64,000 nt of DNA, taken from Lytechinus pictus. Its lineage: Eukaryota. Shown here in pieces: positions 12,284-42,593 of the stretch; the stretch's first letter is position 1; every line of letters starts with the position of its first letter. The notes beneath the pieces were generated by a model. The model did no database searches. It had not been told where the DNA came from and saw only the letters and a program-made list of their open reading frames with translations. The stretch is taken from assembly GCF_037042905.1 (NCBI RefSeq), contig NC_087248.1, positions 5,704,001-5,768,000 on the forward strand, in the 5' to 3' direction. The position numbers and the translations under genes are program-made.

Positions 12284-13396
12284 TCAGATATTTGGTGTAA
12301 ATTTACATTCATACATTTCTTGATAGTATTTCAATGCTTTCTCTACAACTCTGCGTACATCTGGCGTGATTCTCTGTCCGTTATACATCTCTTCTGAATA
12401 ATCAGGCTTTTTTCTCGATGTCGCTATAAATCCCGTGCTTTGCATCGCTCTTGTGTGGAAGTCGCAAAGAAGTCCACTCTTCATAAGTTGACCCATCGAC
12501 GTATTAGCATAGTTCATCCAATCCTTGCCCGACGATGCAGGTTCCCATTTGAGAAGCGCGTCGCGGTATTCCAATCCCGTAACCTCGCAGATTTTCTTCA
12601 CGCACGCCGCAGGGTGCGAGACAAGATCGTCTGAGTCAATGACGAGTGGGTTTGGATCAATATTCGCTTGTACATGGCGCCAAAACGCGTGTTGTCTGCG
12701 AAACGCCTCTCCTCCTCCAGGATAGAACTTGTCCTCCGATAGGTCGAAAGTGGTATCGTCCACCAGGCCCTCATGCTTCTTATTGAAGGCAACCACCGCT
12801 CGACGGTAGGACATCGCAGCCAGAAGCGGATCACGTATCAGGAAGACGTATTTGTATCCGGACTCGACTGAGGGGAGATATTGGTAGAAACCATCGACGG
12901 CTAGGCCAAAGTCTTTGACGATGACGAGACGGCTGGATGCGTTGTCGAGACATTTCTTGACCTCTGGATATCTGCAAAGATACAAAAGATAAATTTCCAT
13001 CAGAAATGTAGATTTAAACCAAATCATATCAAATTCTGTTAAAATGATGGGTATAACACAACAGTAAGCTATGACTTACGACATTTGTCGTGGGTCGCTC
13101 GAAGGCTGTCGAAACTTCGACAGATTATTGACATTGAAATCAGTTCCTTGGTTTTCCATCAAAACGAGGGCCTTCTCGAATTCTTTCTCGTTGCCCTCAT
13201 ATTCAATTGGTAGCTTCATTCCCGTTCGTGTTTCATATTCGACCTGTGCATGTCTGCACGATACATACGATTCCAACCAAACTTCGTGGTCGTCATCGAC
13301 CCCGCTCAGACATTTCGTGAGCGTCGTTGAAACTGAACGTGGAACGCCAGCCAGAAACACATGAGACTGTGTAATAACATAACCTTTTTCAGCCAT
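12284..13396 (-). CDS. P-loop sulfotransferase-like protein A (334 aa). Exons 13396-13080 and 12971-12284
   Basis: 108-bp phase-2 GT-AG intron (TC|gtaagt...ttgcag|A). Motifs: 5'-PSB-like FLAGVPRSVST, VKD, 3'-PB-like FLIRDPLLAAMSY, VIDSDDLVSHP...C...GL, LLKWE. Resembles the Sulfotransfer_5 domain found in BCAT-like proteins. No signal peptide or TM anchor seen. Confidence 0.85.
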
Positions 13397-15078
13397 GTTG
13401 GAACCTAACAGACCGACCTTCGATGACTGAAGCGCAGTCTCAAGTTCCTCTCAAGTTCTTTGTCATTCCTAGTTTATGATCGACCTATCACCTCTACTAA
13501 AATTTTCTAACGTATCTCTATTCCCCTCTCTCTTTAATAGTATACCTGCCTCTCCATTACGCTTGCTTGAACTGTGGCTGGCTATAATGATAGGGTATCG
13601 TACTGAATTCCTCTGTTGAAAGCATATCAAATATGATCCAAAAATAAAAAACATGATCTTTAACACGATCTTTTACCATGCTTACTAATCATTCTATGTC
13701 ACCTCTTGCGTTTTATTCTTGATCTTACTATGCCAAATTTTACGGTTTAAAACCACATAAAACCTCCATCAGCAGATGAGTGTATTTTCATACTATATAT
13801 TTGAAATATTAGTGTAGATATATCAAAGAAGCAAATTAACTTTAAATTGCAGTGAATTACAAACGGTGACATCAAAAAAAGTTTCCAGATGGGGGTAAAA
13901 TTTCGGAAGTAACACTTGAAATACACTTACATTAAAAAAAGTGTTTCTTTTAGAGCAATGTGCGGAGAAGGAATAAATCATGGTGCTGTAAGAGACGAGT
14001 CACAATTATTGTCTACATGACATATAATTCTAAACATCCTCCATTGTTTTCCGTGGCCAAAGTCCAGTGCTTCGTAAACAAATCCTTCCTTTTTATCTTG
14101 TTTATAGGTCAAGGCGAAGAATAAGTGTGCAGTTTGCCTTTCGATATACTACAATGAAATGCAAATACACGATTGTTTGAAGAAAAAAAAGGAATATAGT
14201 GTGTGGAATATTGTTTGAAAAAATAAACCAAAACGAGTACAAGTTATCGTGTACTTTATATCTGGCTTTCAGTAGGCCTACCTCCCCTGGCCGAAATGAA
14301 AATATAAAATCCACAGTATGTTGCTATAGGCCTACGTTTTCATAGAATGATAAATGAGAGAAAAAAAATGAGTAAAATTTTGAAAAAGATGTCATTTACC
14401 CTTTGGGCGTTATGTAGCAAATGTAAGTTTCCCGACCTTAAATGAGATGACCTTAAAGGGGAATGAAATCTTTGGAACAAGTAGGCTTGTGTCGAAACAG
14501 AAAAATCAAAGAATAAGAACAAAGAAAGCTTGAGAAAAGTCAGACAAATAATGAGAAAGTTATGAGCATTTGAATATTGCAATCACTAATGCTATGGAGA
14601 TCCTCCCATGTACGCCACAAAACTTTTAATTATTCGCTACTTTCATCTTGTTTATAAGATTTTGTTAAGACCGTTTAAAACATGTCTCTTTATAAAACGT
14701 ATCCCTTTGAACAAGAAATAGGACAATGAAAGATCGAGAACTCTGAAGCCTTTGAGTATAAATGCCTGTCAATCTGCCATCAGATAAATTGTGAAAGCAA
14801 GCGTTCTACATAAACGGTTTGAAATGGGAAATGTTTGATGGGCTAATTAAAGGGTATAGCATAGTTTACATTTTAATAAAAGGTCGTTTACCCTTGCTGA
14901 AGCACCAAACAGTGGGGGGGGGGGGGGGGGGGGTATGAAAGCAATATATTGAGCTGAAAAATTGAACATTTGGGGGACACCCCTACAGCTAAGCCTATGT
15001 ATACGGGGGTATATAACCGTGTACATGATCCTTTCATCTTTTAGTTAAAGGCCTCGAAGGATTTTTCCAATGACTATA

Positions 15079-17840: not shown

Positions 17841-18157
17841 GAGAGCATTCTAGGATCACACGACGGGCCTGGAAGATTAGACAGATCATTAACATCAATA
17901 TCAACATTCTGGTTCTCGATAAAAACTGCAGCTTTTTCGTATTCTTTCTCGTTCCCCTCGTAGTCGACTGGTAGTTTCTTCCCCGTCAAACGTTCATACT
18001 CGATGAGTGGAAAATTAGACGATATGTAAGGTTCAAACCACACAACATGGTCATCATCGACCACGCTCAGACATTTCAGCAGCGATGTCGACATCGAGCG
18101 CGGAACACAAGCTAGAAATATTCTATGTTGTAGGGGAATCGAACCATTTTCAGCCAT
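17841..18157 (-). CDS. Sulfotransferase-like B: intact first coding exon with no exon 2 of its own (alternative first exon of gene A, or a gene fragment)
   Basis: aaaATGG start and an open 317-nt exon (same length as A exon 1) encoding IFLACVPRSMST...WFEPY, ending in a phase-2 donor TC|gtaagt. No exon-2 homolog seen in 13400-17840. Confidence 0.7.
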
Positions 18158-19088: not shown

Positions 19089-19268
19089 GCAATAGTTTCC
19101 GTTGAGCAAACAGTAAAGTTTGGATAACACATGCAGAGCATACGTACAATAGCAAAGCAGCCAGAACGATAATATCTCCTGTATTCAGTTCCCTGTCTAA
19201 ATTAAGACGCTGATCCAAGAGCCCTAGCTTTTACTGCCGAACAACTTGAAGGTGAACGTCGTCAAGTA

Positions 19269-22210
19269 ATGGCGGATGCCAAACGATCTCGTCTCATCTT
19301 CATTTGCATTCAAAGGTCTGGGTCGACATCAATCCTGAAATGTTTGAGCTTCATTGACGGGCTCGAGGCATGGTTCGAGCCGTATGTCATCGCCAAGATC
19401 GCTATCCGAGAGTACAAGGCACATGCTGGGAAGGACCTACCGACTGATTGGAAAGAAGAGAACCGTGCCGAGTTCGACCACGCTGCTCAGTTAATACATA
19501 CTATGAATAAACTACCTTTAGTAGAAGGAAAGGATTTTGCGTAAGTAGCATTCAGTATTCTTTCCTTTAAAAACTTAATCGAACTGATCAGGGGCGTAGA
19601 CAACGGGGGGGATGAGGGGGATGCATCCCCCCCAACTCACAAGGTGGGGGGGATGGCATGTACAATCATCCCCCCCAGGTTTTGGGGAATGATATTTGGT
19701 TACTTAATAAGTCATAATGATGATAATTATAGTAATAATAATAATGATAACAATTATAATAATAATAATAATAATAATTATGATGATGATAATAATAATC
19801 CTCATCATTATTGTAATTGTGTTTATTGTTATTAGCCGCATTCACACGGTGAAAGCCAATTCAGACGGTAAAAAAAAGAAAATCTTACAAGTATTTTGTG
19901 GTTATCTTGTGGTTTGGAAACCACAAGATTAATCGCGCATATTTTGCAGTGCGCGCAATCTCGCAGTATTGTTACTCCATGGATCATAGTGATACTGTTT
20001 ATGTTTTTTGTATCTGTATGTTAATGAGCCGCCAGCCAATATCCATCTATGGATACTATGCCTGTTTCTTTGAGGTAAAAAAATGCATAGTATGTACGTA
20101 TTCATTATGCTTTATAATGAACAGACATATTGTTATTTGTTTGTTGTTTATGTGTTCTATTCACAAATGGCCACAGAGGCTGTTTTCATTCATAACCACA
20201 TACCCATATCAAGACAACAAAGACTATACCTGCGTGTACACAGTTGACATTGGTTTTTTTTTCTGAAGAGGTGTAACAGAAAAATTCACAGAGATAAATA
20301 AATACGTAGTGTGGTTCAATATGCAATACTATGTGTCAGTCCATTCTGTATTCGTATGCCACGGTGTGTAGATCTTGTCGATGTATGTCTGTCCATTCAA
20401 GGCGTAGTATGTGTGTGGTGCGCGCACCCGTGTGTGTGTGTGTGCGTGCGCGCTTGTGTGTGTTATTTTACCTCATTAAGTATGCATCAGATTGCACGAT
20501 TTCAAGTTCAAAATTGCAAAAGCTCCCTACCGTGGGAGGGGGGACACCCCCCTCCCACACCCTCCCCCCGCTCGGTCGCTTCGCTCCCTCGCTCGGGCGC
20601 TTCGCGCCCTCACTAGCGTTGGCAGCCCAATCATCCCCCCCAGGTGTACGAACCTGTCTACGCCACTGGAACTGATAGCCGGTGATGGAAGGATAGGTTG
20701 TGGAATAATTAGGTTTATAAAGTCCATAAAGTCAAAGAGTCAAAAGCTTTCTACATGTATACATATTTGAAAAAAAATGTAATGACCGAGTATATTTTAG
20801 TCTATATTTGCAAATGGCCTTATCCGCCAACATTTCTTCCACTTCAAATTCAAGATATAGAATCAATGATCGTTTTGGAATTTCAGGACCTCCAGTATCT
20901 GTCGTTGTCCTTAGGTCTACTCGAAACGTTATAGTCTTTAGATATATGAATGGAAATGGAGGAAATCATAATTCAACAAACCGCGATAGTTTAATGCAAG
21001 AGGGTCTACATGAGATTGGGTGGCTCTCTTACATGTGCCATACCAACCAACCCTCAACCACTTCAGAATTTATAACCATTAATCAGAATGATTTGTGCCG
21101 AAAAGAAACACCTTTCCCATAAGACGTCGACAAAGCCATGTGCTGGATGAAATTTTGGCGCGTTTTCTGGTCTGGACCGAGGTGCGTGAGTGACTCAGCC
21201 AGGGATTTGGCAAATACTCAACAGTCATTCCTTTTTCTGTTTGCTCATGATAACCATGTGTATTTTCATTTTCAACTGTTCTCCTTTATTTACTTGGGTG
21301 ATTTTGCTACTTTACGTTAAATCAGCTGTTTGTTTATGAAATGCTCAGTTTAAAGTAATGGTCATTACTGTGTAGTGACCTCAATCAATAGCAAATCGCA
21401 CTTGGCATGGAAATTTTTCCCCATAAATCTGAGATTAATATATAACAGCCTGACTATAGATCTTTATCTTTTACTGTCAAATAAAATTCCAATAGCAAAT
21501 TATTTGTCAATCTAACACGTTATATCATTTCTGTTGGCAGGTTTTCGGAGGTGAAACGACGTCTAGAGAATCTAAAGAGCGCCCAGGTCGTCGTCAAAGA
21601 CATGGGCGGATCATTCTGTGGTTCTCGAAAGCAGTACCTCCCTTCTCGTAATAGCGGCTACAAGTACGTCTTCATAATCCGAGATCCACAACTTGCTCTG
21701 TCGTCCTACAGAAGAGCCACCATACAGACATCTCTCACCATGCCAGGGTACACTTCTGGCAAAACAGAAGAGGACTTTGATCTTCGAGTGGATGATCCGT
21801 ACTACTACGCTGCCGGTGGCAACTACTTCAACATCCATGCGGCCTGGAAGTATGTACGAGAGAACCTCGACCCAGACCCGTTGATAGTAGATTGCGAGGA
21901 TTTGATGGCCAACCCAAAGCCATACCTACAGAAAATCTGTGAGGTTGGAGGGTTGGAGTTCCACGATGGGCTCTTAAACTGGGATGCTTCCACCGATATC
22001 ATCAAAACCTGGAAGAATCCTGGGGGAGTGCCGAAGATGCTGGCAACTGGTCTTGGGTATTTCCATCGAACAGCTATCAACAGCTCTTGCTTTCAATTTA
22101 GTAAGAAAGAGAAACCACCACTCTCCTCTGCAACGAAAGATATTCAGATGGCGGTTGCCGATGGGACAGAGTATTACAATGAGATGTACGAACTTCGTTT
22201 TAAGCCTTGA
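19269..22210 (+). CDS. P-loop sulfotransferase-like protein C (313 aa). Exons 19269-19540 and 21541-22210
   Basis: Phase-2 GT-AG intron (GC|gtaagt...ggcag|G). Motifs CIQRSGST, WFEPY, VVKDM, FIIRDPQLALSSY, IVDCEDLMANP, LLNWD. Confidence 0.87.
19589..20668. mobile_element. hAT-like non-autonomous transposon in the intron of gene C
   Basis: TIRs caggggcgtagaca / tgtctacgccactg with an exact 8-bp TSD, gaactgat. Confidence 0.85.
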
Positions 22211-25010: not shown

Positions 25011-27532
25011 ATGTCGAAACCGGATCCTACGACGACATCGACAGCAGATGCCAAGCGATCCCGCCTCTTCCTTATTTGCATTCCAAGGTCCGGGTCGACA
25101 TCACTCCTAAAATGTTTGAGCTTCATTGACGGGCTCGAGGCGTGGTTCGAGCCGTATGTCATCGCGAGAATCGCTCTTCAACTGTACAAGGCAGATAAGG
25201 GGAAAGAGCTACCGACGGACTGGAAAGAAGAGTACCGAGCCGAGTTTGACCACGCTGCTCAGATAATACATGAAATTAATAATCTACCCTTAGTAGAAGG
25301 ACAGAAATATTCGTAAGTATACAGTGCGTATCAAAAAAAAGTTTACACTTAGAAAAAATCCTGTAAAATTATACATTTGTAATATCCTGAAGATTTTTCC
25401 ACATTTTAACATTGGTACTTTTTTTTTTTTTTTTAAACCCACAAGTGCACACCTATTTACCAATAATGCATATAGCATTTCCATTTATTTGAAAGCAGGA
25501 TAAAAGAGCATTGTAGATTAAATGCCTTGCTCACGGGCGTAGGTGCCGCGGCCGGGGATCGAACCCCGGACTTTCCATGTATAGCCAGGCGCCTTAGACC
25601 ACTCGGCCACGGCACCTCCACGGTACAGATCCATTTAAGCAAATGACGATATAACTGTCGAAAAATATTTCCACTTGAGTGAGCACCACTTACTTTTGAA
25701 AAGTTAGTGAAAAATGATTTGCGCAGAACTTTGAAATAGTTATGCGAATAAAAGTAGACCTTAATCATGAAGAACGTGTTGAATTTAGCTAGTAAAATTG
25801 ATTTGAAGATATCTTTTACCTTTTTAAACTTTTCCTTGCCAAAAATCCTTTGAGGAGTGCATTGCGCCCCACCCCATTCCCCCACACATCGAGGCAATCG
25901 TGACGATATTTGCTTTACACTGAGCTGTGATTTACATGAAATGGCTTAGGCTTAATGATTTTCATTTTGTTAATCATTGTCAAGCTTGGAAAAGGTGTGG
26001 AGAAACAAGTATTAAATAAAAATGAAATGTAAACCCACTTTAAATGATAAAAACTTAGTGAAAAGATGTCTGATATAAACTTTTGTACAGATTTAGTTAT
26101 GTCCTCAGATCCAGCTGGCACAAAAAGGGTAAAGGTTGTGCTTACTAAGTGTTGAAATTTCAATTTGGGTGGCAAATTTGTTACAAAATGCTTGAATGTA
26201 TCTGTTTTATTTCAGTTGACTAAAAGTGCAAGGGAAATGTATGATAAATGTTTCGCAGGGTAAATTTGATTTTCTCCTTCACACAGCGTGAAAACGAGCA
26301 TTTCTGCGCAAACAGATTTCTGCGAGCTTTACAAAAATGGACAGTGCTCACTCAAGTGTAACATTCTGTCAAAACCTTTACTTGCGTTGGATAGATGAGA
26401 CCCAAACCTAAGATTATATGTGTAAAAATTACCCACATGTTTTTTTTTTAATTTCCAGGGCTTTTTCAAAGTGTAATCTTTTTTTGATACGCACTGTATA
26501 GGCCTAGGGATTATTTTATATGAATATACTTTATATCATAGAATATGAACGATATAAAAGGATAATCAATGGCCGTTTAGAATCTCATACGTTTTAAGCT
26601 CTTCAATGTTAATTATCGTGCAGTAACATTCATGAGAATCCTTTTTCAGAAGTCAGACCGACAACCATTGTCAGCTACGTTGGTATTTTGAAAAGAAAAA
26701 CAACAAAAAATGATGGGGATATCATCCAAATAAAATGCAGCTTCCTAAAAAATTGTCCAGCGGTATGTTTGAACATGTTAGGGGTATCTTTTTAAGTTTT
26801 CACTTTGCCAGTTTGCTCATGAAAATGTTTTCTTACAATTTCCCCCATCATAATGGCAGATTTTCGGACCTGAAAAAGTGCCTTGACAATCTTGAAAGCT
26901 CCAAGGTCGTCGTCAAAGACATGGGCGGATCATTCTGTGGTCATCGGAAACGATACCTTCCTTCCCGCGACAGCGGCTTCAGGTATGTCTTCATCATCCG
27001 AGATCCTCAACTTGCGATCTCTTCCTATAGAAGAGCCACCCTGCAAACATCTCTCACCTTACCAGGTCACAACGTTGGCAAAACAGAAGAAAACTTTGAT
27101 CTCCTCGTCGATGATCCCTACTACTCCTCTTCCGGTGGCAATTACTTCAACATCCATGCGGCCTGGAAGTATGTACGAGAAAACCTTGACCCAGACCCGT
27201 TGATCGTAGATTGTGAAGACTTGATGGCCAACCCAAAGCCATACCTACAGAAGATCTGCGAGGTTGGAGGTTTTAAGTTCCAAGATGAACTTTTAAGATG
27301 GGATGCTTCCACCGATATCATCAAAACCTGGAAGAATCCTGGGGGAGTGCCGAAGATGCTGTCAACTGGTCTTAGGTATTTCCATCGAACAGCCATCAAC
27401 AGCTCTTGCTTTCATTTCAGTAAGAAGGAGAAGCCTCCACTCTCCTCTGCAACTAAAGATATACAGAGGGCCGTAGCCGATGGAATAGAGTATTACAATG
27501 AAATGTATGAAGTACGATTTAAGCCTTTATGA
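25011..27532 (+). CDS. P-loop sulfotransferase-like protein D (324 aa). Exons 25011-25312 and 26860-27532; close paralog of C
   Basis: Phase-2 GT-AG intron (TC|gtaagt...ggcag|A). Motifs CIPRSGST, WFEPY, VVKDM, FIIRDPQLAISSY, IVDCEDLMANP. Confidence 0.87.
25322..26496. mobile_element. Tc1/mariner-like non-autonomous element in the intron of gene D
   Basis: TA|cagtgcgtatcaaaaaaaag...cttttttgatacgcactg|TA. Confidence 0.85.
25419..25619 (-). mobile_element. tRNA-derived SINE (family 2) nested in the Tc1-like element
   Basis: Minus strand: ggaggtgccgtggccgagtggtctaagg (A-box), ggggttcgatcccc (B-box), poly(A) tail. Degenerate relatives near 32625-32785 and 49698-49860. Confidence 0.85.
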
Positions 27533-30275: not shown

Positions 30276-32048
30276 TAATCGTCATTTTGAGACACGTAAA
30301 AGTCAACCCCTCCACCAGACCTGTTTTGTCTGTTATTAACGATAAATTCGTAGCCGTCCAGTGCAAATGGAAGGTTAGACTCACTGGATAACCAAGTTTC
30401 CGAAATACCAATTATAGAAAAGGGAAGTTTGGATCGATTATCAAATAATTGGAATTCCTCACTTACTTATATCTTCTAATTTCGAATGCGTTTCATGAGT
30501 TGGGATATTTTATCTATATCTTTTTTTTTGGAATAGGCGCCCTAAAAGGTAATGGAAACCGTCACCCTATATGTCATGTTCAGGAAAACCCTCATAACGT
30601 CCCCTAACCCAGGTTAGCTGGTGACTGCTACATCTAAATCATTAAGTGCCAAATAAGTTTTAAAAATCACACCCTCCACAACGAGCGGATAAAAAGAAAT
30701 CAACAATAGAGGGCAATCTTGCAACGAAAGCAAGAATCGGAATTTACCACTCTCAACGATCATACTTTTGTGCGAGTGAGAGACAAAGGAAGATTAAAAG
30801 TGCCACCCAGATATTCATCTCGTCATGTCTACATCACTATCGTACAGATTCTGGGGGGGGGGGGGTAGCTAAAGGCCCCCCCCCAAAAAAAAAAAATAGA
30901 AAAGAAGAAGGTAAATATATAATATTCTGAATAGTTTTTCAAAATCTATCCACAGGTCGGATTTTTGTACTTAAAATCATCATATTTTGCTCGCTCACTT
31001 CGCTCCCTCAGAACTTTTGAGATTTTTTTTGCTACACCATGGCTGGCCATTCAAAATTTGTGGCACATAACGCTTCTGGTCTACATCCCATAGAAAAGAT
31101 TATTTGATGACAAGATCTCCAATCTCGTCATGTCGAATTATGGTCAGATTACATGATCTAGGATCTCGTCCTGTTTACATCTTGTCAGCTGAAAAGATGT
31201 AGACATGACGAGATCGAAGATCTGGCCATCTGATCATCTCTTTCACATGATGTAGATATGATCATCTCTTTTAAAAGATGAAGACATGATGAGATCTAAA
31301 GATATAGGTATCTCATCAACCCTTTTAAAGGATGTTTGCATCTGGTCATTTCCCTAAGGAATGTATACATAGAAGCTTGTCTAAACTTCTGGGTAACATC
31401 TGTAAGCTTCAATAAGAGACCGACAGTACATTATACAAAAAAAATAAATATTTTGAGTGATGGAGAGAAAGGGTAAAGGGAAAGTGGTGCCTCTTGACTT
31501 TGGTCATGAGAAGTCGTTACCAATGTAGACCTGTTTACGTTTTTATAAAATAATTTTTCAGCCAAAATACCACCATCCATTTATGAATAGATATATTTGT
31601 CCTACGTTAAGGTTTAACGCTGAATATGGTATTGTTGAATGTTTGTTCTGGTTCTTTTATGATTCTGTAGCTGTGTAGATAAAGAGGCCATGATAAGGTC
31701 CTATATGAATCTTTGAATTCTATGTAATTTCATTAATCAACCCACGCAAACAAACTGAATAACAAGTTGAACTACTATGGAACCATATTGAAAATATCAA
31801 GGACAAGGTCGGGAACTCCATGCCAAAAGCTTGTTCTGATGTTTGTCATTGACCTTGATACGATATGACAACGTAAACATAATCATGGAAAACAAACGTG
31901 CAAACCGGTGAGCTGCCTGGACGCCAATTTAAATGTACATTGGGTTCAGGATGATGAAGGGTTGGCAAAATTTAAGCCTCTCCTTTTAATCCTACATCGT
32001 TAATCTTTGACGGACCTTACCTTATATCTCGATCCATCTGCTGCAACC

Positions 32049-35000
32049 ATGGCTGCCAAGGACCATGTTGAGGAGATGAAGGAACTTACGAGCGGTGTGA
32101 CTGAATTGATTGGTGAGTTTTGGCATAGTTTAGAGGATCTGTCACCAGCAGGATCCACCGAACCAGGCCATCTTCTTGATCAACTTCCCCTGGAAGCTCC
32201 TCAACATCCTGATAAATGGCAAGATCTATTGGATGATGTCAGGAAGATGATCATTCCAAACGTAAGTTGGCTTATGCTACCAACCCCGTTCTCTCTTTTT
32301 AAAAATATTTACTCTTTCTGAATCTTACGTTTCTCATCGATTTTTTTCCTTCTGAGCTCTATCTCTCTTTTATACACCCCACACATCAGGACCACGCAGT
32401 TGGTGCAAGGTCTTCCCCTGAAAGACTACATAATAAAATCGCAGACTGTCGATCATTTGACTTGAAAAACTTACGTGAATTTTGTGGCTTGTCAAAATTT
32501 CGAGGAGGAACATGTCCATCTATTCTTCCTCCAACGTTGACAGTTTTCGTTGTTTGTTTTACAGTAAATCTCCCAAAAGCTATACTGTCTTGCACCCGCC
32601 CCCACACACCCGCGCGCCCTCACATTTTTTTCAAACAAGTCCATACCGAATTTCCGAGAATGCATGTAGCATTTCCATTTATTTTAATGCAGGATAAAAC
32701 AGCACTATCGATTAAATACCTTTCCCACGGGCATAGGTATCGTGGCCGGAGGTCGAACCCCCAGACTCGGCCACGGAGCCTCCACACCTACACCTACCCG
32801 ACACACACACCCATACACACACGCACGCAAACACCCTCACGCAACCAAACACATACCACATCTATAAATCAAAAAGTTCACCCACAATGTATACCCCCAG
32901 AAATGTTGGCCCTATATTGTGAAACGGATGAAATTTTACTAATTTTAACAATAATAATATTCATTATCGTGTATAATTCTTAAGTATACATATTTTGCAT
33001 ATTTTTGTGATATCTAATGCTTTATCTTGCAAAACACCAGTTTATGTTTATTTAGATGTCTAACCTTCGATGAGTCAGATAATTAATGTGAACAGACAAG
33101 GTTATGTGGATTTTAACCTGTTGAGATTCTTCACTTCTTTTACAAATACTAATTTCAATGACTTTCACACTCCAAATGTTATGGATTTTGAATAAAACCA
33201 GGCTATAGCAAAGAAATGATCAAATTTTGGAAACACTGTTATTGTAATCCTAAAGATTTATTTAAATCACCAAAGGTTTTCGATTTCCCCTAACTACGGT
33301 CGATCAGGAATTATATTAAATCCATTGGATTGTAATTTGATTTTTTTTAAAATCATAGATGCCTCACCTATCGAGTCCTAATTATCATGGATATGTGGAG
33401 ATTGGAACATCTGCTCCATGTGTGGCGGCAGCCCAACTTATCGCTGCTTTGACCTCGCCAACATGTACTTGGGTAAAATCTTCACCTTCATTTATCTTTT
33501 TAATACAAATAGATCAAGCTATCACGGACAGGTCAATGATCTTAACTTCTAACGTTTTTATATGTAATATTGTTGTCAGCTATCATTTATAGATGATAGC
33601 TCGTAAACACGTCGTATTTGTCAAGGAGGGGTTCAAGGTCTCGTGAAAATCTTACAGGTTAAAAACTAGCTGAAAATCAAATAGACATAACCCATTTCCG
33701 ATTAAATTATATTCAATAGATTACGTGAAAAACTGTATTGTAATGGAGGTTAAATAAAAGCTGGCATTTTTTTTTATTTCATTTTTATTTAAACAATATT
33801 TCAATAGGGTACCCTTTCAGCAGAAGCTGGTATCAAAAGGGGCCCTAAAAACATAATGACAAAACACGTATATACAAATGATAAAAATATACAACGTAAC
33901 ATACGTAAAAACATTATATAAATCATACATATTAGAACATAGAAAGGGATGGTAAGTTGGAGTCATTTAAATATTTGTAACACAGGAACCATTGACATTT
34001 TAACATTTGCTGAACATAATATATGATTTGAGTTCTTTTTTAAAACTAGAGAGGGTGGATAGAGTTTTAAAATGAAGGGGCAAGGAATTGAATATTGATA
34101 TTGAGGAGATAATGAATGATCAGTTTTAGCATTCATTATTGCATTTTGGGGCATCGAGTTGTAGGTTGGAGGCAGGTCTTTTATTTAGGTTATGTTTTTC
34201 GGATACTAATTTAAAGTTATTATAGAAGATAAATTATTTAAACTTTTAAATATGAATATACATGGGTTTCTAAATATCGTACATTATTCCTGAAATTTTG
34301 GAGGGAGCTGAAAAATCCTAATTAAAAAATACTAATTTCTTATGGTTTGTAAAAAATACAGATAGGTGAATGTGGAATGAATACGTGAAACCAAAATGTT
34401 GATGAATAAAAATCCCCATAACGTTTACGATAAAGTATGACTGTATGCTTCCCATCCCGCATCGTCATAATGTAAGCATGGTTTGACTCCTCCCTGAACA
34501 TGTTGAATTGTCATTGTAATGTTGTTGTATCCTGCTGTGATTCAAGAAAGAATGTTTTCTTCAATACTTGTCAAACAAAATGTTATCCTTTGACTTCATT
34601 CAATGCAGCACGTGAATGGAACTGGAACAGAGCTTGAGATGCGAATGACAGATTGGTTAGGTAGAATCCTGGGACTTCCTGATCAATTTCTATTCAGTTC
34701 AGGCATAGGCAATGGCGGAGGTGTTATACAGGTAAAAGAGGATAGTGTTCAGCTGACTCCAGAGGAGCGTTTCATGGAAGGACTTGTCAGACGTGTTATC
34801 CGACAAGTCCTGTTTTATCCGACAGTTACCATAGGAACAGTGCTTCTCAGCCAATCAAATCCAGGAAAGTTGTCAGATCTGACAACCTTTCAGATGAAAA
34901 TGTTGATGAAACGCTCCTCAAATAGATGAACTCTATCTAGTATATCAACAAACTACATTGACGAATGTGAACAAGAATATATATTCTGCTATGGTCAGAT

Positions 35001-38000
35001 GGTATCCCACTCTAAACACATGTTAGTCAGATTTGAACAGACGGAATGTTCCCCTCGAGCAGGAGTATAATTCTAGTCAAAATTGACAAGATTGTAGAAA
35101 GAATGACCCCAATTCTAGTCAGCGTGGACAAGGATTATGAAAAAACAATGCTAGTAAAAATCAAAATATCATGCAAATGAAATTGATCTCTAGATTCCTG
35201 GAAAATGACGGTTACTTTTTTGAGGGATACTACGAAGGATTTTTGTTTTCAATTGTCATGATTATACAGAATGTAAAAGATGTCGAAATAGACTTGATCT
35301 TAGATGGCACATGTGTGTAATTACGTAACCTAACAACGATGATCTAGATTTTATATTAAATTTATAAACATACGGCGATGATGATTCTTATATTGATAAA
35401 ACTATTTTCACCTCAAGGGCACATTTCATGTTGAATGAACTCTTTCAAACAATCCTTTGAAAATGTCCCATTCGTCCTTTTTGTTTTCTTATGAAGGAGA
35501 GTGCGAGTGGCAGTTGTATTTTGATGCTTGTCGCTGCAAAGAGACGTGTCCTTGACAAACTGCGTCAGACAGATAAAGATTTAGATCCATATGATGTCTC
35601 GTCTAAGTTCGTTGCTTTAATGAGTGATCAGGTAACACATTTATGTATTCTTTATCTATTAATCCATACAGTATACATCTACACAGAAAGAGAATTTGGG
35701 TTAAGTAAAGTATAAGTAGTACAAAATCGCAGTTGGCTGCTTTATTGAGTGACCACGTAACTCATTCGTGTATTATTTATCCAAATCGGGCGGCGAAGTT
35801 TTTGCGACAAAGAAAAAAAAAGAGAAAAAGAAAACAAAAATTGAATGAAAAGGGTGAAATGTTTATATCACTTGTTGAAAATTATGTCGAAATTTGTTTT
35901 ATAATTAGGTTTTCATTATCAAACATGTCAAAGGTCAAATATTTCGCTACCTCGCCACTTTTAATAATTTTCCTAAAATATGCCATGTCCTACCGATACG
36001 CCACAACGATCAAAGATTATGATCCAACGGGCAGTGCTCATTTTTTAATAAAAACAATGAAAATTAGGGGTATTACTACTCAAATATCCAGCCCAGTCTT
36101 TCCAACTCTCTTTCTTTGTCCTTTATCTTCTTTCATGGTCTTTCCCTCTCTTTTATTAGCCACCATGATTTGTTGTAATAAGTCATATCTTGTGCAGGGA
36201 TCTACACTCGAAATAAAAACCGCTCGTGCTTGATATCAAACCTCGCCAAATATCATGGAGATTCACATTCAAAACTGCAACATGTTAACAAAATTGATAG
36301 AAAACCACAGGTTTAGATTAAAAGCTATAATCTTTTGTTTATTTAATCTCCTTTTTAGGCTCATTCTTGTATCGAACGTTCTGGGTTTGTAGCTGGGATT
36401 CGAACCCACATCCTACCAACCGACGAGACAGGATCACTCAGAGCTCAGGCTCTTCTTGATGGCATAGCTGAAGTCAAATCACTAGGAAGGAAACCCATTT
36501 TTGTAAGTTGATATTTCATTAATGATATCCCAATTTATATTTACAATCATCTTATTTTTAAACTTGATTGTCTACAGGGATAGCTATATAGGGTCGTGGT
36601 GGTAATGGTTTGTTTGTATTTATTTCCATTTAAAACAAAATATATACATGATTAAAAAAGAAAAATCGTCATATAAAATATGGAGGATTGCCCATTGCAG
36701 CGGTATTAACATAATACCGCTGTTTCTCCATGTGGTCCTTTGCAACGTAAATACATGTTATAAAAAAATATTTATACACAATACATAATCAAATACATTA
36801 CAAGAAAAAAATGCAAAGACTAAAACTAAATTATGGTTAAAAATATCCCAGTATTAATGGTGAATATGAATCCTGATGGAAATAGTATACAATTTGACAA
36901 TTTGAGTGAAATTGTGACTGTCTTTCTATAAATTCTGGCGAATTGAGTGTTTTTGTCAGAGATTAATGCAATATAACGGCCAAACATTATGTTCAGATGC
37001 CCCGCTCCCTAATATAACACTCGGCGTTAAAAACACTGCGCCTCAGTTATTTCATAAACACATCAACTGTCGTACTTTTCATGATCCATATTTCTCTAAT
37101 TTTTATTCCGACAAAACTAGCTCGGTGTTACCCTAGGGTCGACAACAACTTTGGCTTTCGATGCTCTAGCAGAATTGGCTCCTATATGTGAGTGCTTTCA
37201 CAAGATCATTATTTCGTTATTCATTTAGGACAGCCTTATCATCATTTATTCTTCATAAACTAGGGTTTTGCCTGGGAGTTTAACCGGCCGTTACCATAGC
37301 AATAGTCAGAAATCTATGCATCTCGGCCAATCAAAACCAAGGAAAGATCTGACAGATCAGATCTGTCAAGTTGTGGGACGGTAAATGTTGATAAAACGTT
37401 CTCAGTGTCCCCATTCACCATCATCATCATGCTGCTATGCCAGGCAGGCAAGCCCTTTTTTCGTATTTTAAATGATTAGTTATCATGCCGTGTTTATTTG
37501 TTCTTCAGGTAATGACGAGGGAATATGGGTCCATGTAGATGCTGCCATTGCTGGCTCTGCCTTTCTTTGTCCTGAATTCAGACATCTGATGGCTGGGATT
37601 GAGGTATTAAACTTTCTCTTATTCTGGAAAAGATTTTAGATAGCAGGGCTCCCTTGTAAAGCAGGCCTTTGGCTTGATTGGGACTACCCTGCTTTTTATG
37701 AAGAAAACATGAATAAATAAATAAATAAAATAAATAAATCACGAAAACATGGCCGATTTTGACATGATCGCACAACTGAAATCGGGAAATCCGTATAATA
37801 GTGAAAGTCCTAATAACATCACGCTTATCGTAATATCTGCTCAATCCACCATAGTATTTGGCCTCTGTGATAAAACAAAAAAAATATGTAAATAAAAATA
37901 TCCGTTTCGTGCACATTCGTATGATTGGAACATTCATTTAGGAAGGGCCGAATGGTTACTGCGTAGGAGTATCATCAGAGTATATATTTCTTTTTAAAAA

Positions 38001-41000
38001 TGAATGTGTTATTATGTCCACTCGATTTGATTTACTATATTAAAAAAGAGTGAATTAGGCATTTTAGGTCTTTTCAATCTTATTGAAACCTCAATATTTG
38101 CAGACAAATGTTAATGTTCACTTAGTGTTTGACTCTTCTCAATGAATAGAATGGAAATGGTTATTAAACAAAAATCTATTGCCGCCAGAATACCAATTGC
38201 AGAATTCCATTCAATAAAATATGAGCATAGGCCTACATCTAAATTACATGAAAGCCCAACATGATAACATAATGCTTATTATGCAGTTTTCGTCATTACA
38301 AGAAGTGCTAAGGACGGTGAGAATAGTTCAGGGCTACAGTCTGAATCCTCTGGTACATTGTCTGATTATTGTGATGAAGATATTTTGCTAAGGAGATAAA
38401 ATTATATATATCTTGATAAAGTTTTGTTTAACACTTCGTAAAAGATTGCTCCCAGTAATCTTTTTTTAATGATTATCTTTTCTCTTTGTACTTGGAACAG
38501 CTTGCAGACTCTTTCAACTGTGGACCGCATAAGACAATGTTAGTAACGATGAGCTGTTCAGTTCTTTGGGTCAAAGACAGAACAACTGTTGAGAGCTCAC
38601 TGGCCATTGATCCTCCGTACCTTGATAATCATCTAGAAAAACCTCACGTGGATTACAGGGTAAGAGTGATATTGGTCGTAATGATGATGATGATGATGAT
38701 GGTGATGGTGATGGTGATGAAGGCGACAACGACGACTGTGACAATGACAAAGATGAGGGCGATATGAACGACAAAGACAACAATGGTGACCAAATGATTG
38801 ATGATGGTTGATGATACTGGTAATGACGCGAATGATGACGACGACGACGACGACGATGATGATATTGATGAAGGCTTCAACGAAAAAGACGACGCTGATG
38901 ACAAAACCACAAACATTGATGATGATGATGATTATTATTATGATTATGATGATGATAACTATGATGATGATGATGATGATGATGATGGTAATGATGAGTA
39001 AAATGATCTGGACAACGATGAATAGTAAAGAAATTATTTAAACAACGTTGATGAGGGAATTGAAATTTTCAAAACCTTGTAAATATAACAAATACCGTTT
39101 TTGACAATTGTCATACTAAACATAATTCATAATTTAAGTACTTCATTAATTCACAGACGACTATTTTTTCCCTATAGCACTGGAGTTTCAATCTAACTCG
39201 ACCGTTTCGCTCACTCAAACTTTGGTTTGTTATTCGACTGTTTGGCGTTCAAGGGCTACAAGATCACATCAGGAAGGTATTCAGAAATTAAAAAAAAAAC
39301 CCAATCCTTTATACAGAAAATAAATAGGCCTATTCTAAAAAGGTGGTTGAAAGTTTCTTATTCTTAGATGATTTATTAATGAAAAACAAAAAAGTTTCTA
39401 ATAACTCTCAATGACATCAATCCACCGAAAATTGTAGAAATTGGTGATTCAATCCCATTTCTCACAATATTGTATTCACACCCTCTACGGCAGCTCTGTG
39501 CTTAACGAAGTGTTCGCCAACTCTGATTCACGTCTGGGGTCGACTCCCAATCTCGACATGAAAATGTTATCACAATTTTCTTTTGCTGAATTAAGAGTAA
39601 GTTGGCACCTATCCGAGACTTGTAATTAATTTCAAAGTTTCAAAAAGCCATTGGTGCGATAGGTTACGAGAGTTCTGATTTTTCTAAACCAAGTTTTCAA
39701 CAAAATATTTTTCATTTTACATATATGAAGGCGGGGGGGGGGGGGGGGGGTTGCAACACCATGACTGATGCCACAGCAGGCACACTACATAATCTGTATC
39801 CAGGGCCCCGTCTTACAAAGAGTTATGATTGATTAGATCAACCTCAACTATGGAAATCCAGATCTGCAATGCATAATTGTTCAAAATATTTTCTAGATAT
39901 GATGTAAAGTCAAAGTACGTTTATCTTTTTTTTTAATTCAGGGTGCTTTTTTTTTGCTTACAAAGGACATTGACCACATTTTCTGGAGAAAAATAATGAC
40001 ATATATGGATTTCTATATAGTTGAAGTTGATCGGATCAATCGTAACTCTTTGTGAGAAGGGGCCCTGACTTCATACCATCGGTTTTATTGGTATGACTGT
40101 CACACTGATATGAATGTCGCTAATGAGGGCTCCTGATTTTTTGCATGCATAACAGAAAATAGTTTTCAAACGATCGAGGATTTTGGTTAGACCACGGATA
40201 GGGGGGGGGGGGCGATTTCATATGCTATTCGTGTCTAACGTTTGTTTCATTATTCAATTCTTGTTAATTGTACAATAATGTAGTAATAATGTGAGTCGGC
40301 TTTGACAGGTCAACGGCCTTTCCGACTCCCTACATCCGCTACATTTTTTTTACATTTCTACCTTTTTTTTCATATTGTTTATAGTATTTTGACATTTTTT
40401 TTTACATTTGTTTTACATTTCTACCTTTTTTTCTTATTGTTTATAGTATTTTGACATTTTTTAAATCCTTCTGTATATGTATTTTAAAAGGATGTTAGAA
40501 ATAAATTGAATTTAATTCTCTATGTTAAGTTGGCATTAATCTATCATGTCTATTGATCACTTAACCATTGTTTCTTCTCGTTTCGGATGTCAATATCATG
40601 TATCTCACTTCACTCCACAGCAATCTCGGCTCGTTAAAGAGTTTGCCCACCTGGTGAGCACCGATGCCCGATTTGAGCTGTGCGCAGAGGCGATATACAG
40701 CCATGCGTGCTTCAGATTAAAGGTTAGTAATTACATCTTATGAGAAGTTATTACAGGGAGTTTATGCCTCTGTTACACCGGTGTTACTGATTCCAGACCG
40801 ACCAAATCTATTACGTTATTTCCAATGACACAACTATCAGTCGGTTTGGTGCGGACTTGCTTGTTTGACTGCAGCTGACGGTATATATCAGTGACAATAG
40901 AAATATGAAGGAAAATCCAAGTATAGAGCATTATCATCACCAGCAAATTGTAATGATATGAAAACGAGAGGGGCTGAATGCGGTGAGGTTTCCGAATGCG

Positions 41001-42593
41001 CGAAATTAGTGTATGATTGGATTTAAAATGTTCATGTCAAAACACGATGGCACCACCCCTGGTAATGGTTGTGAGTTTCATGACATTCGCTCTGGGGAGC
41101 GTTTCATCAATATTTTCATCCGACAAGTTGTCAGATCTGACATCTTTCCATGATTTTGATTGGCTGAGAGGCACTGTTCCTATGGTAACTGTCGGATAAA
41201 ATGGGACTTGTAGGATAAAACGTCCGACAAGTCCTTTCATGAAACGCTCCCCTTTAAATTCCAATACTAATCGAATGGCCAACTTCACCCCTGGATTTAA
41301 AACTATACCCTACTCCAAACCCGCATACATTCGTAATTCCGAAGCTTCGTTATTCCGAAGGTTCGGATATTCCGAAGGTTCGTTATTCCGAAGGTTCGCA
41401 TTTCCGAAGGTTCGTAATTCCGAAGGTTCGTTAGTCCGAAAACGAAATGAGTTTCGTAATTCCGAAGGTTCGTTAGTCCGAAAACGAAGTGAGGTTCGTA
41501 ATTCCGAAGGTTCGTTAGTCCGAAAACAAAATGATAAACTAACCATATTTCGTTTTCGGACTAACGAACCTTCGGAACAACGAACCTTATTTCGTTTTCG
41601 GATTAACGAACCTTCGGAGCAACGAACCTTATTTCGTTTTCGGATTAACGAACCTTCGGAACATCGAACCTTATTTCGTTTTCGGATTATCGAACCTTCG
41701 GAATAACGAACCTTCGGAATAACGCCACAAATGTTCGGATTAACGAACCCTTTTACGTTTTCGGATTAACGAACAACGAGGTATAGGCAATTTGCGTGTT
41801 TCGGAATAAAGAACCTTCGGAATTACGAAGTGTAACCCTCTAAACCTACCCTAAACGTAACCTAAAACCCTATTGCAACCCAAACCCTAACCCTACCTCC
41901 AGTAGCGTACCGTGAACCGCAGGAGACAAAGCATTGGGGGGGGGGGCAGTGCATTGTCTGTGAACAATGCTTTGCCCCCCCAATGCTTTGTCTCCTCCGA
42001 GTCACGGTACGCTACTGCCTACCTCTTAGACGAAATTAAGCCCAGAACAATTGTCGCAGGAGCAAATGTCGTGGCACCGTTAAATGTTATGTTAAGCTTT
42101 ATATTCTGCTTACGTACTTATTGCAGAAATGTGGACGTAACATGAATGTCATCAATATTCATAATAACATACAAGAGGTATCAAAGAAATGTTTTAAGTA
42201 TTTGATCAACTGAATTTAGCAGTCGTTTTATTTTCCATGGATAATTGGAGTCGGATTAAATTAACAGTTATCAGCACTTTTGACATGTTAGAGGTAATAT
42301 TTTTCCTCATTGAAGTTTGGTCACTGTTATAAGATTTTATGACCGAGTAAAATAGCAATAAATATTTTCCCCGACAGAAATCTGACAATGAAACAAATCG
42401 AAATCTTCTGAACCAGATTAACATGACACGAAAAGTTGTCTTGACAGGATCTGTGTTCAAGGAAAAATATATTCTACGTTTCGCTGTATCCAGTCCGTTC
42501 ACTGAAAGCAAGCATGTAGAGTTTGCTTGGAAGATAATCACGGAAGCAGCGAATGAACTCAAAGGAGCAGATACTGATGTTCTAAAAGATTAA
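32049..42593 (+). CDS. Divergent aromatic-L-amino-acid/histidine decarboxylase-family enzyme (group II PLP decarboxylase, 488 aa). Exons 32049-32261, 33359-33472, 34609-34731, 35497-35631, 36359-36502, 37121-37187, 37509-37603, 38501-38659, 39178-39276, 40621-40722, 42378-42593
   Basis: All ten introns are GT-AG and in phase, at positions matching DDC exon borders as I recall them. Motifs [46 protein letters not shown] (PLP lysine), [29 protein letters not shown]. No stops or frameshifts. Confidence 0.93.
33770..34270 (-). mobile_element. Degraded 3' fragment of an L2/CR1-group LINE
   Basis: Minus strand encodes ...[18 protein letters not shown], a typical ORF2 end, followed by a 3' UTR and an A-rich tail. 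Confidence 0.5.
34762..34919. mobile_element. About 160-bp MITE; inverted copy at 41094-41252
   Basis: TIRs gaggagcgtttcat / atgaaacgctcctc; the interior is the reverse complement of 41094-41252. Confidence 0.8.
38680..39000. repeat. (GAT/GAC)n low-complexity tract in decarboxylase intron 8
   Basis: Directly visible trinucleotide repeats downstream of the donor at 38660. Confidence 0.9.
41322..41837. mobile_element. Foldback-like ttccgaaggttcg MITE, 9-bp TSD (copy 2)
   Basis: Same termini as 28192-28781; flanks ctccaaacc / ctctaaacc. Confidence 0.9.
41900..42017. mobile_element. 118-bp hAT-like MITE
   Basis: TIRs cagtagcgtaccgtga / tcacggtacgctactg; exact 8-bp TSD cctacctc. Confidence 0.85.

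What the first reader, a model, noticed from the sequence alone, without database searches (positions are those of the whole stretch)
12284..42593. Candidate animal metabolic gene cluster: sulfotransferase-like array next to a neofunctionalised-looking PLP decarboxylase
Seen: three complete cytosolic sulfotransferase-like genes plus a fourth first exon lie 4.5 kb from an intact but atypical DDC/HDC-family decarboxylase, with no other gene found between them. Established: group II decarboxylases make amines, and PAPS-dependent sulfotransferases sulfate amines and phenols. This sulfotransferase-like domain is also fused to a PLP class IV aminotransferase-like domain in plant BCAT-like proteins. 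Inference: the locus may encode a short pathway from a (modified) amino acid to an amine and then to sulfated or sulfamated products, with the paralogs diversifying the products. Adjacency alone does not prove this.
Basis: partly seen in the sequence, partly recalled or inferred. Interest (0 to 1): 0.8.

Follow-up and report, generated by a model that had tools for sequence, protein, structure and literature searches.

The report
Sulfotransferase-like array beside divergent DDC paralog
In the painted sea urchin, three genes from a very large sulfotransferase-like family sit next to an unusual copy of the dopa-decarboxylase gene; the genes are real and expressed, but nothing found here shows that they work together as a pathway.

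Summary
The window is Lytechinus pictus chromosome C4. It carries three intact two-exon sulfotransferase-like genes (A, B, C). The "fourth first exon" is an alternative first exon of gene A. An intact 11-exon, 488-aa group II PLP decarboxylase (D) starts 4.5 kb after C, with only repeats between them.

The pathway reading is not supported so far.
- The sulfotransferase-like family (PF13469/PF19798 type; nearest solved relatives CurM sulfotransferase and TPST) has at least 68 catalytic-exon copies at 44 loci on 17 chromosomes. Adjacency to some enzyme is therefore expected.
- Only this one of nine decarboxylase loci is adjacent to the family. D's sister paralog lies beside canonical DDC on C2, with no sulfotransferase-like match nearby.
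- The layout is shared with L. variegatus. S. purpuratus keeps CHORDC1–A–B but shows no decarboxylase exon in the 5.8 kb visible beyond B. Three Diadema loci show none within the sequence fetched.
- C and D are both transcribed, but their ratio differs widely between RNA samples.

D keeps K303, H192, D271 and Y332 but has a rewritten aromatic pocket, so a new substrate is likely. Other readers of this scan flagged sulfotransferase arrays elsewhere in this genome.

The parts
12284..12971 (-). Sulfotransferase-like gene A, shared exon 2 (C-terminal 228 aa, including the 3'-phosphate-binding RxPxxxxxS motif, plus stop codon)
   Evidence: Open frame; AG acceptor and in-frame splicing to both first exons; 95.6% aa identity to L. 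variegatus, dN/dS 0.50
13080..13396 (-). Gene A proximal first exon (317 nt, PRSVST loop), 108-nt intron to exon 2
   Evidence: 95% identical to L. variegatus P0244 exon 1
17841..18157 (-).
   Evidence: Same length and phase as the proximal exon; gives an intact 334-aa ORF with exon 2. L. variegatus RefSeq isoform P0243 matches the distal exon at 100% and exon 2 at 98.7%. S. purpuratus has only this type, 8.6 kb upstream of exon 2. dN/dS 0.24
19269..19540 (+). Gene B exon 1 (has Q where the family has the invariant P of the PRSGST loop)
21541..22210 (+). Gene B exon 2 (313-aa product in all)
   Evidence: dN/dS 0.10 against L. variegatus
25011..25312 (+). Gene C exon 1
   Evidence: The spliced product equals P0002 exactly
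26860..28218 (+). Gene C exon 2: CDS to 27532, then 3'UTR
   Evidence: An RNA contig of run X2 aligns over exactly 26860-28218 and continues beyond the acceptor; stranded reads show a + strand transcript
31975..32261 (+). Decarboxylase D exon 1 (5'UTR from about 31975, ATG at 32049)
   Evidence: A 2171-nt RNA contig of run X23 aligns to 31975-32261 and leaves at the predicted donor; Pfam PF00282 N-terminus
33359..33472 (+). D exon 2: rewritten substrate-pocket exon (W71L, F80V, P81E, T82I, I101P, F103C in human DDC numbering)
   Evidence: Same 38-aa length and same intron positions as DDC; no PDB match even at E<=10
34609..37603 (+). D exons 3-7 (34609-34731, 35497-35631, 36359-36502, 37121-37187, 37509-37603); they hold H192 (SDQAHS) and D271 (HVDAA)
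   Evidence: GT-AG at every junction, continuous frame
38501..38659 (+). D exon 8: PLP lysine K303 (GPHK in place of NPHK) and catalytic-loop Y332
   Evidence: Alignment to human and Drosophila DDC structures with residue numbers; PF00282 at 41.8 bits
39178..42593 (+). D exons 9-11 (39178-39276, 40621-40722, 42378-42593 including stop); G354T in [14 protein letters not shown]
2467..2739 (+). Flanking gene: CHORDC1 exon (CHORD domain), convergent with gene A
   Evidence: Pfam PF04968, E 2.4e-10; the same neighbour lies next to the A ortholog in S. purpuratus
51010..51375 (+). Flanking gene: first exon of an ecto-5'-nucleotidase (NT5E/CD73)-like gene with a hydrophobic N-terminus (signal-peptide-like by eye)
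   Evidence: E 3.6e-31 to solved 5'-nucleotidases

Best explanation
The locus holds lineage-specific duplicates of two unrelated enzyme families that lie together by descent within Lytechinus. There is no evidence that they form a co-regulated pathway.

Genes A, B and C belong to an echinoid-expanded family of soluble, PAPS-type sulfotransferase-fold enzymes. They carry a PRSxST 5'-phosphosulfate loop, an invariant Glu 21 residues downstream that is the likely catalytic base, and an RxPxxxxxS 3'-phosphate motif. By inference they sulfate small molecules in the cytosol. Gene A swaps its whole N-terminal half, which includes the PAPS loop, through two mutually exclusive first exons.

Gene D is a DDC-derived PLP decarboxylase. 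It keeps the full catalytic apparatus, but its aromatic cage is replaced by smaller or charged residues. By inference it decarboxylates an amino acid other than DOPA or 5-HTP.

Shown here: the gene structures, family membership, transcription and splicing of C and D, the paralogy, and the partial synteny. Inferred: the catalytic activities, the substrates, and the lack of functional coupling.
For: - Gene models and intact reading frames.
- Purifying selection against L. variegatus: dN/dS 0.10-0.57, where non-coding DNA is 80-87% identical over the longer alignments.
- Sulfotransferase fold: AF2 model with pLDDT 89; every one of the top Foldseek PDB hits listed is a PAPS sulfotransferase, with TPST1/2 and CurM ST first. 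The family profile hits CurM ST at E 1.1e-9.
- P25, R26, S29, T30 and E47 are the same in all 20 full-length members. K120, R148, P150 and S156 are invariant columns.
- There is no hydrophobic stretch of 17 or more residues.
- Family size: 68 exon-2 hits at 44 loci on 17 chromosomes. Of 9 PF00282 loci, only this one is adjacent to the family.
- D groups with the C2:29.36M paralog (support 100/99), and that pair groups with L. pictus DDC (100/99). The sister paralog has no sulfotransferase-like match nearby.
- Synteny: the layout is the same in L. variegatus. S. purpuratus keeps CHORDC1-A-B with no D exon in the 5.8 kb beyond B. The Diadema loci show no D exon within the sequence fetched.
- Expression: X2 has C at depth 42 and D exon 1 at 0. 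X23 has C at 11-19 and D at 17. X1 and X3 hold 88% of the sampled words of C but were not listed as holders of D's last exon.
Against: - Under uniform placement, the chance that one of nine decarboxylase loci lands within 5 kb of a sulfotransferase-like locus is only about 1.4%. This figure is post hoc.
- B, C and D are on the same strand, in tandem, and close together.
- Both C and D are present in runs X2, X4 and X23 of one study.
- Both partners are fast-evolving, lineage-specific paralogs, which is the pattern expected of a young specialised pathway.
- The S. purpuratus flank is too short to exclude linkage there.
Confidence: 0.62

Rival explanations
1. One reading: D makes a non-canonical amine, and the adjacent sulfotransferase-like paralogs O- or N-sulfate it (or sulfate its precursor). 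This would be a young two-step metabolic gene cluster specific to Lytechinus or to camarodont urchins.
For: - Tight, same-strand adjacency with no intervening gene.
- The arrangement is retained with intact, selected ORFs in L. variegatus.
- Both genes are transcribed in overlapping samples.
- D's pocket is remodelled, so a novel product is plausible.
- Sulfotransfer_5 is fused to a PLP-fold domain in plants.
Against: - The family sits at 44 loci, so a neighbouring enzyme is expected somewhere.
- The C:D ratio ranges from about 1 to below about 0.05 between runs.
- D's sister paralog shares the derived pocket changes P81E, I101P, N300G and G354T but has no sulfotransferase-like neighbour.
- No D exon was seen beside the orthologous or related sulfotransferase-like loci in S. 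purpuratus and Diadema, within the flanks available.
- The plant fusion partner is fold type IV, not a fold type I decarboxylase.
Confidence: 0.12
2. The sulfotransferase-like enzymes are 'activating' sulfotransferases. They install sulfate as a leaving group, as CurM ST, the olefin-synthase ST, LGS1 and retinol dehydratase do, rather than making stable sulfate esters. Any link with D would then be through elimination or rearrangement chemistry.
For: The best sequence-level solved relatives of the family profile are CurM ST (E 1.1e-9) and the olefin-synthase ST (E 4.9e-7). LGS1 and retinol dehydratase are among the structural hits.
Against: TM-scores are only 0.35-0.5. TPSTs and ordinary cytosolic SULTs score about the same. 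Similarity of the PAPS-binding core says little about the fate of the product. No carrier-protein or thioesterase partner is in the window.
Confidence: 0.1
3. One or more members are decaying duplicates. Candidates are gene B of L. pictus, which has Q at the otherwise invariant Pro of the PAPS loop, and D, a catalytically compromised DDC copy. On this view the locus has no joint function.
For: The P-to-Q change is seen only in L. pictus B among the 20 full-length members plus L. pictus B. D sits on a long branch of 0.78.
Against: All reading frames are intact. dN/dS is 0.10 for B exon 2 and 0.30 for D exon 1. D keeps K303, H192, D271 and Y332 and is made as a spliced 2.2-kb mRNA.
Confidence: 0.08

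Closest known systems
CurM / olefin-synthase sulfotransferase domains (PDB 4GBM, 4GOX) and tyrosylprotein sulfotransferases TPST1/2 (5WRJ, 3AP1)
   Same: Same P-loop sulfotransferase fold. PRSGST-type 5'-PSB loop with Arg rather than Lys. An acidic residue about 20 positions downstream, at the spacing I recall for the TPST2 catalytic Glu (from memory, not tested). An RxPxxxxxS 3'-phosphate motif. Best sequence hits and best structural hits.
   Different: A, B and C are free-standing soluble proteins of 313-334 aa. They are not PKS-embedded like CurM, and they are not Golgi type II membrane proteins like TPST: there is no hydrophobic anchor. Identity to these structures is only 14-19%, with TM 0.4-0.5. 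Their substrates are unknown.
Pfam PF19798 (Sulfotransfer_5), including proteins auto-named 'branched-chain-amino-acid aminotransferase-like protein 2'
   Same: The nearest ESM-Atlas clusters are PF19798 clusters, and the top one is mostly echinoderm. Most L. pictus, S. purpuratus and Diadema paralogs carry PF19798. The Diadema ortholog P0005 passes its threshold.
   Different: The Lytechinus A, B and C proteins score below the PF19798 threshold (16-17 bits against 23.2) and pass PF13469 and PF00685 instead. They have no aminotransferase-like domain, unlike the plant fusion.
Aromatic-L-amino-acid (DOPA) decarboxylase, DDC
   Same: Same 11-exon coding structure; the exon boundaries fall where I recall the human DDC exon boundaries (from memory). 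42% identity to primate DDC and 46% to L. pictus DDC. Nested inside the DDC clade. K303, H302, H192, D271, Y332 and R355 are retained.
   Different: The substrate cage is rewritten: W71L, F80V, P81E, T82I, I101P, G102T, F103C, N300G, W304T, G354T. The otherwise conserved GDML stretch reads AAQL. For comparison, L. pictus DDC is 58% identical to primate DDC. D has one sister paralog, at C2:29.36M.
Animal metabolic gene clusters (physically linked, non-homologous enzymes of one pathway)
   Same: Two enzyme classes with chemically compatible reactions lie within 4.5 kb, together with tandem paralogs.
   Different: There are only two enzyme classes. Co-regulation is not seen. Linkage is documented only within one genus. 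No product is known.

Membership tests
PAPS-dependent sulfotransferase superfamily (P-loop ST fold) | 5'-phosphosulfate-binding loop (PKSGTT / PRSGTT type) after the first beta strand | tested here: met
   IPRSGSTS in C, VPRSVSTT and VPRSMSTS in A. P, R, S and T are the same in all 20 full-length relatives. L. pictus B has IQRSGSTS.
PAPS-dependent sulfotransferase superfamily (P-loop ST fold) | 3'-phosphate-binding motif (Arg ... Ser on strand/helix, RxPxxxxxS) | tested here: met
   I147, R148, P150 and S156 are invariant columns in 24 sequences. They align to CurM VRHPYSVIES.
PAPS-dependent sulfotransferase superfamily (P-loop ST fold) | Overall fold | tested here: met
   AF2 pLDDT 89.2, pTM 0.88. 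All 50 Foldseek PDB hits listed are PAPS sulfotransferases or retinol dehydratase (91 hits at E<=0.001), probability 0.99-1.00.
PAPS-dependent sulfotransferase superfamily (P-loop ST fold) | Curated Pfam threshold | tested here: met
   PF13469 scores 27.6-40.9 bits against 27. PF00685 scores 22.6-24.5 against 22. Both are marginal.
PAPS-dependent sulfotransferase superfamily (P-loop ST fold) | PAPS-dependent sulfuryl transfer | not testable with these tools
   Needs an enzyme assay.
Classical cytosolic SULT (SULT1/2 type, PF00685) | KxxxTVxxxE dimerisation motif and Lys in the 5'-PSB (PKSGTTW) | tested here: not met
   No KxxxTVxxxE in P0001, P0002, P0005, P0243 or P0244. The loop has Arg, not Lys. 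The motif definition is from my own knowledge.
Group II PLP decarboxylase, DDC/HDC/TDC clade (PF00282) | Schiff-base lysine (K303) in the (N/G)PHK motif, plus H192, D271 and catalytic-loop Y332 | tested here: met
   K303 and Y332 by alignment to 3RBF and 3K40 with residue numbers. SDQAHS and HVDAA are in the spliced protein.
Group II PLP decarboxylase, DDC/HDC/TDC clade (PF00282) | Pfam match | tested here: met
   Exon 8 scores 41.8 bits against 27; exons 1 and 3 score just below alone. The genome search also hits exons 7-9 over the cut-off.
Canonical DDC (aromatic substrate) | Aromatic substrate cage W71, Y79, F80, P81, T82, I101', F103', G354 | tested here: not met
   L, Y, V, E, I, P, C, T respectively. 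The roles of these residues are from my knowledge of the pig DDC-carbidopa structure 1JS3.
Metabolic gene cluster | Linkage conserved across species that carry the pathway | tested here: inconclusive
   Conserved in L. variegatus. Not seen in 5.8 kb of S. purpuratus or in the Diadema sequence fetched, up to 10 kb a side. D orthologs outside Lytechinus could not be retrieved.
Metabolic gene cluster | Co-expression of the members | tested here: inconclusive
   Both are transcribed, but C:D depth is 42:0 in X2 and about 15:17 in X23. X1 and X3 hold C and were not listed as holders of D. These are assembly-level data from a handful of runs of unknown tissue.
Metabolic gene cluster | Members act on one pathway's intermediates | not testable with these tools
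   Needs coupled enzyme assays or knockout metabolomics.

The most novel reading that the evidence does not exclude
A young, Lytechinus- or camarodont-specific animal metabolic gene cluster. A DDC-derived decarboxylase with a new, non-aromatic (possibly basic or polar) substrate supplies an amine. The adjacent CurM/TPST-like soluble sulfotransferases O-sulfate or N-sulfamate that amine. Gene A's alternative first exons and the B/C duplication diversify the acceptors.
Probability: 0.1. Interest if true: 0.75.

Novelty: new member of a known kind. Interest (0 to 1): 0.35.

Why it matters
Physically linked biosynthetic genes are rare in animals, so a true case would be notable. L. pictus is now genetically tractable, so it could be tested.

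Even without coupling, two things stand out:
1. Sea urchins carry a large, uncharacterised family of soluble sulfotransferase-fold enzymes, with at least 68 catalytic exons in L. pictus. Their nearest solved relatives are CurM-type and tyrosylprotein sulfotransferases. This family probably feeds an unexplored sulfated metabolome.
2. DDC has given rise to a two-member clade that keeps the catalytic residues but has a remodelled pocket. These are candidates for new amine-forming activities.

The alternative-first-exon design of gene A swaps the PAPS-loop half of the enzyme. That is an unusual way to diversify a sulfotransferase.

Tried and rejected
- **D orthologs outside Lytechinus.** A whole-library phmmer with exon 8 returned nothing above 61% identity and no self-hit, so the own cluster is probably withheld. 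A profile made of an insect TDC plus the eleven exon translations was swamped by insect TDCs, and no echinoderm hit was among the 120 listed. The MAFFT placement of the exon fragments was poor.
- **Spliced D protein.** The 488-aa spliced protein has no reference, so I did not fold it, look it up or search it whole. Only its exons and local BLAST were used.
- **D exon 2 against PDB.** No match even at E<=10.
- **Own-genome lookup.** The look-up of encoding contigs has no record for the window's own protein P0002.
- **Other echinoid genomes.** The genome search with locus L005 as a handle is not possible, because eukaryote genomes are not in that collection.
- **P0006 ENA contig.** No DNA was served and there were no informative neighbours.
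- **Literature.** Searches for the LOC identifiers, for 'aminotransferase-like protein 2' with urchin, and for sea-urchin DDC paralogs found nothing. The search on sulfotransferase expansions in sea urchins gave nothing on this family.
- **Rfam.** No match over the whole window.
- **Other genes between C and D.** Rejected. The depth there comes from a multicopy foldback repeat and small repeat fragments.
- **The fourth first exon as a relic of a lost gene.** Rejected in favour of an alternative first exon.


Full report
**Identity of the window.** The window is Lytechinus pictus, G000 contig C4:5704001-5768000. The spliced product of gene C is letter-for-letter the L. pictus protein LOC129258522, P0002. 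There are no N runs.

**Checking the observation.** Six-frame ORFs, local tblastn and splice-site modelling give the following genes.
- Gene A, minus strand: exon 2 at 12284-12971, proximal exon 1 at 13080-13396 with a 108-nt intron between them, and a second first exon at 17841-18157.
- Gene B, plus strand: 19269-19540 and 21541-22210, 313 aa.
- Gene C, plus strand: 25011-25312 and 26860-27532, 324 aa.
- Decarboxylase D: eleven exons from 32049 to 42593, every intron GT-AG, giving a 488-aa protein with no internal stop.

RNA supports two of these junctions. A contig of run X2 aligns from exactly 26860 to 28218 and runs on past the acceptor. A 2171-nt contig of run X23 aligns to 31975-32261 and leaves at the predicted donor. 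Between C and D the only RNA or contig depth falls on a multicopy foldback repeat built of 42-nt units (28236-28661, with a second copy at 41366-41749 in D's intron 10) and on small repeat fragments.

**The 'fourth first exon'.** This exon has the same length (317 nt) and phase as the proximal first exon. It splices in frame to A exon 2 to give a 334-aa ORF. The L. variegatus RefSeq protein P0243 matches the distal exon at 100% and exon 2 at 98.7%. In S. purpuratus the only first exon upstream of the orthologous exon 2 is of this distal type: it is 74% identical to the distal exon and 60% to the proximal one, and it lies 8.6 kb upstream of exon 2. Its dN/dS against L. variegatus is 0.24.

**What the sulfotransferase-like genes are.**
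- *Pfam.* The full-length proteins pass PF13469 (27.6-40.9 bits against a cut-off of 27) and PF00685 (22.6-24.5 against 22). PF19798 is below threshold for the Lytechinus proteins but above it for the Diadema ortholog.
- *Atlas.* The nearest ESM-Atlas clusters are PF19798 clusters. The top one is a mostly echinoderm cluster auto-named 'BCAT-like protein 2'.
- *Solved structures.* A profile of 24 family members hits the CurM sulfotransferase domain at E 1.1e-9 and the olefin-synthase sulfotransferase at E 4.9e-7.
- *Fold.* An AlphaFold2 model of C has pLDDT 89 and pTM 0.88. Its top PDB matches are all PAPS sulfotransferases, with TPST1/2 and CurM ST first, at TM 0.35-0.54.
- *Motifs.* The PRSxST loop, a Glu 21 residues after the loop Arg, K120, and the R148-P150-S156 motif are the same in every full-length member.
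- *Localisation.* There is no hydrophobic anchor (no hydrophobic stretch of 17 or more residues) and no KxxxTVxxxE motif.

These are soluble, PAPS-type sulfotransferase-fold enzymes of an uncharacterised family, not classical SULT1/2 enzymes.

**Family size.** A six-frame search of the L. pictus genome with P0002 gives 117 matches. Of these, 68 are exon-2-type hits at 44 loci on 17 chromosomes, including arrays of up to seven. Other readers of this scan flagged sulfotransferase arrays elsewhere in this genome, for example s1-322128; whether those belong to this family was not checked. PF00282 marks nine loci, and only the one in this window lies near a sulfotransferase-like match. Under uniform placement, the chance that at least one of nine decarboxylase loci falls within 5 kb of a family locus is about 1.4%. 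The pairing was chosen after the fact, however. With 44 loci and 88 flanks, several neighbours that happen to be small-molecule enzymes are expected.

**What the decarboxylase is.**
- *Catalytic residues.* Exon 8 aligns to human and Drosophila DDC structures with K303 and Y332 in place. SDQAHS (H192) and HVDAA (D271) are present.
- *Identity.* D is 42% identical to primate DDC, the best full-length representative found, and 46% to L. pictus DDC. L. pictus DDC itself is 58% identical to primate DDC.
- *Paralogs.* The other L. pictus PF00282 loci were fetched. They show canonical DDC at C2:29.42M, an HDC at C3:63.2M, a TDC at C14:8.05M, and a second divergent copy at C2:29.36M, about 50 kb from DDC.
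- *Tree.* In a maximum-likelihood tree D and the C2:29.36M copy are sisters (100/99). Together they are sister to L. pictus DDC, to the exclusion of primate DDC (100/99). Both sit on long branches.
- *Pocket.* Exon 2 has the same length and the same intron positions as in DDC, which allows an ungapped reading: W71L, F80V, P81E, T82I, I101P, G102T, F103C. In addition there are N300G, W304T and G354T. P81E, I101P, G102T, N300G and G354T are shared with the C2 sister. Exon 2 alone finds nothing in the PDB even at E<=10.

The 'neofunctionalised-looking' description is therefore supported, in agreement with s1-320096. However, the pocket remodelling began before D came to lie beside the sulfotransferase-like genes, or at least independently of such a neighbour.

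**Synteny.**
- *L. variegatus* has the same order and orientation: A exon 2, proximal exon 1, distal exon 1, B, C, then a PF00282 gene. Non-coding DNA is 80-87% identical over the longer alignments between the two species, and all coding pieces show dN/dS of 0.10-0.57.
- *S. purpuratus* keeps CHORDC1 convergent with the A ortholog. It also has an unannotated B-type gene, 82-84% identical to B, divergent from A. The 5.8 kb of sequence available beyond that gene holds neither a C copy nor any D exon.
- *Diadema.* The D. antillarum trio and two D. setosum singletons of the B/C type have no D exon within the sequence fetched (up to 10 kb a side; only 1.8 kb beyond the trio's third gene).

These flanks are short, and I could not retrieve a D ortholog from any species outside Lytechinus. 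Linkage beyond the genus is therefore unproven rather than disproved.

**Expression.** In one study, runs X1-X3 hold 88% of the sampled words of C exon 2 and X4 holds 58%. D's last exon and 3'UTR are held at 93% by X23, at 25-28% by X2 and X4, and X1 and X3 are not listed as holders, which needs a twentieth of the words. When the runs are laid on 26700-32690, X2 gives C depth 42 and D exon 1 depth 0. X23 gives C 11-19 and D 17. Two 2026 RNA-seq runs, sampled at 6%, show about one read deep on C and none on D. Both genes are real, spliced transcripts, but their ratio varies by more than ten-fold between samples. That argues against tight co-regulation. The tissues are unknown and the data are assembly-level.

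**Verdict.** The most likely reading (about 0.6) is that two fast-duplicating enzyme families happen to be neighbours in Lytechinus. The pathway hypothesis keeps roughly 0.1. It is chemically sensible and cheap to test in L. pictus, but it rests on adjacency alone.

Independently of that hypothesis, three things are worth recording: the size and CurM/TPST-like character of the sulfotransferase-like family, gene A's exchangeable N-terminal exon, and the two-member divergent DDC clade.

Noticed in passing
window 28236-28661 and 41366-41749: Two copies of a foldback element built of 42-nt tandem units arranged as long inverted repeats (arms up to 178 nt, 86-89% complementary). It is very abundant in RNA contigs and raw RNA-seq reads, with summed contig depths in the thousands to tens of thousands and about 30-50 reads deep in a 6% sample. 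One copy lies at the 3' end of gene C's mRNA contig and the other in D's intron 10.
   Followed up: partly
window 19305-19313 (gene B exon 1): L. pictus B has Gln (IQRSGSTS) where all 20 full-length family members examined, including the L. variegatus ortholog, have Pro in the PAPS loop. The rest of the gene is under strong purifying selection (exon 2 dN/dS 0.10).
   Followed up: partly
G000:C2:29357000-29367000 (loci L012, L023): A second divergent DDC paralog lies about 50 kb from canonical DDC. It has GPQK in place of NPHK (H302Q) and shares P81E, I101P and G354T with D. It is the sister of D in the tree.
   Followed up: partly
L005:5841-7813 (S. purpuratus AAGJ06000858.1): An intact-looking B-type sulfotransferase-like gene (82-84% aa identity to L. 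pictus B) that has no called gene in that assembly's annotation.
   Followed up: partly
window 51010-51375: First exon of an ecto-5'-nucleotidase (CD73)-like gene with a hydrophobic, signal-peptide-like N-terminus, 8.4 kb downstream of D.
   Followed up: partly
window 43677-44287: ORF fragments that look like the C-terminal part of a LINE-type reverse transcriptase, just downstream of D. There was no Pfam hit at E<=0.01 for the one piece tested.
   Followed up: partly
L. variegatus proteins P0243 and P0244: P0244 (LOC121413562) is only about 95% identical to the proximal exon 1 and exon 2 in locus L001, although it comes from the same chromosome record. This suggests a second copy or an uncollapsed haplotype of gene A in that assembly.
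   Followed up: no
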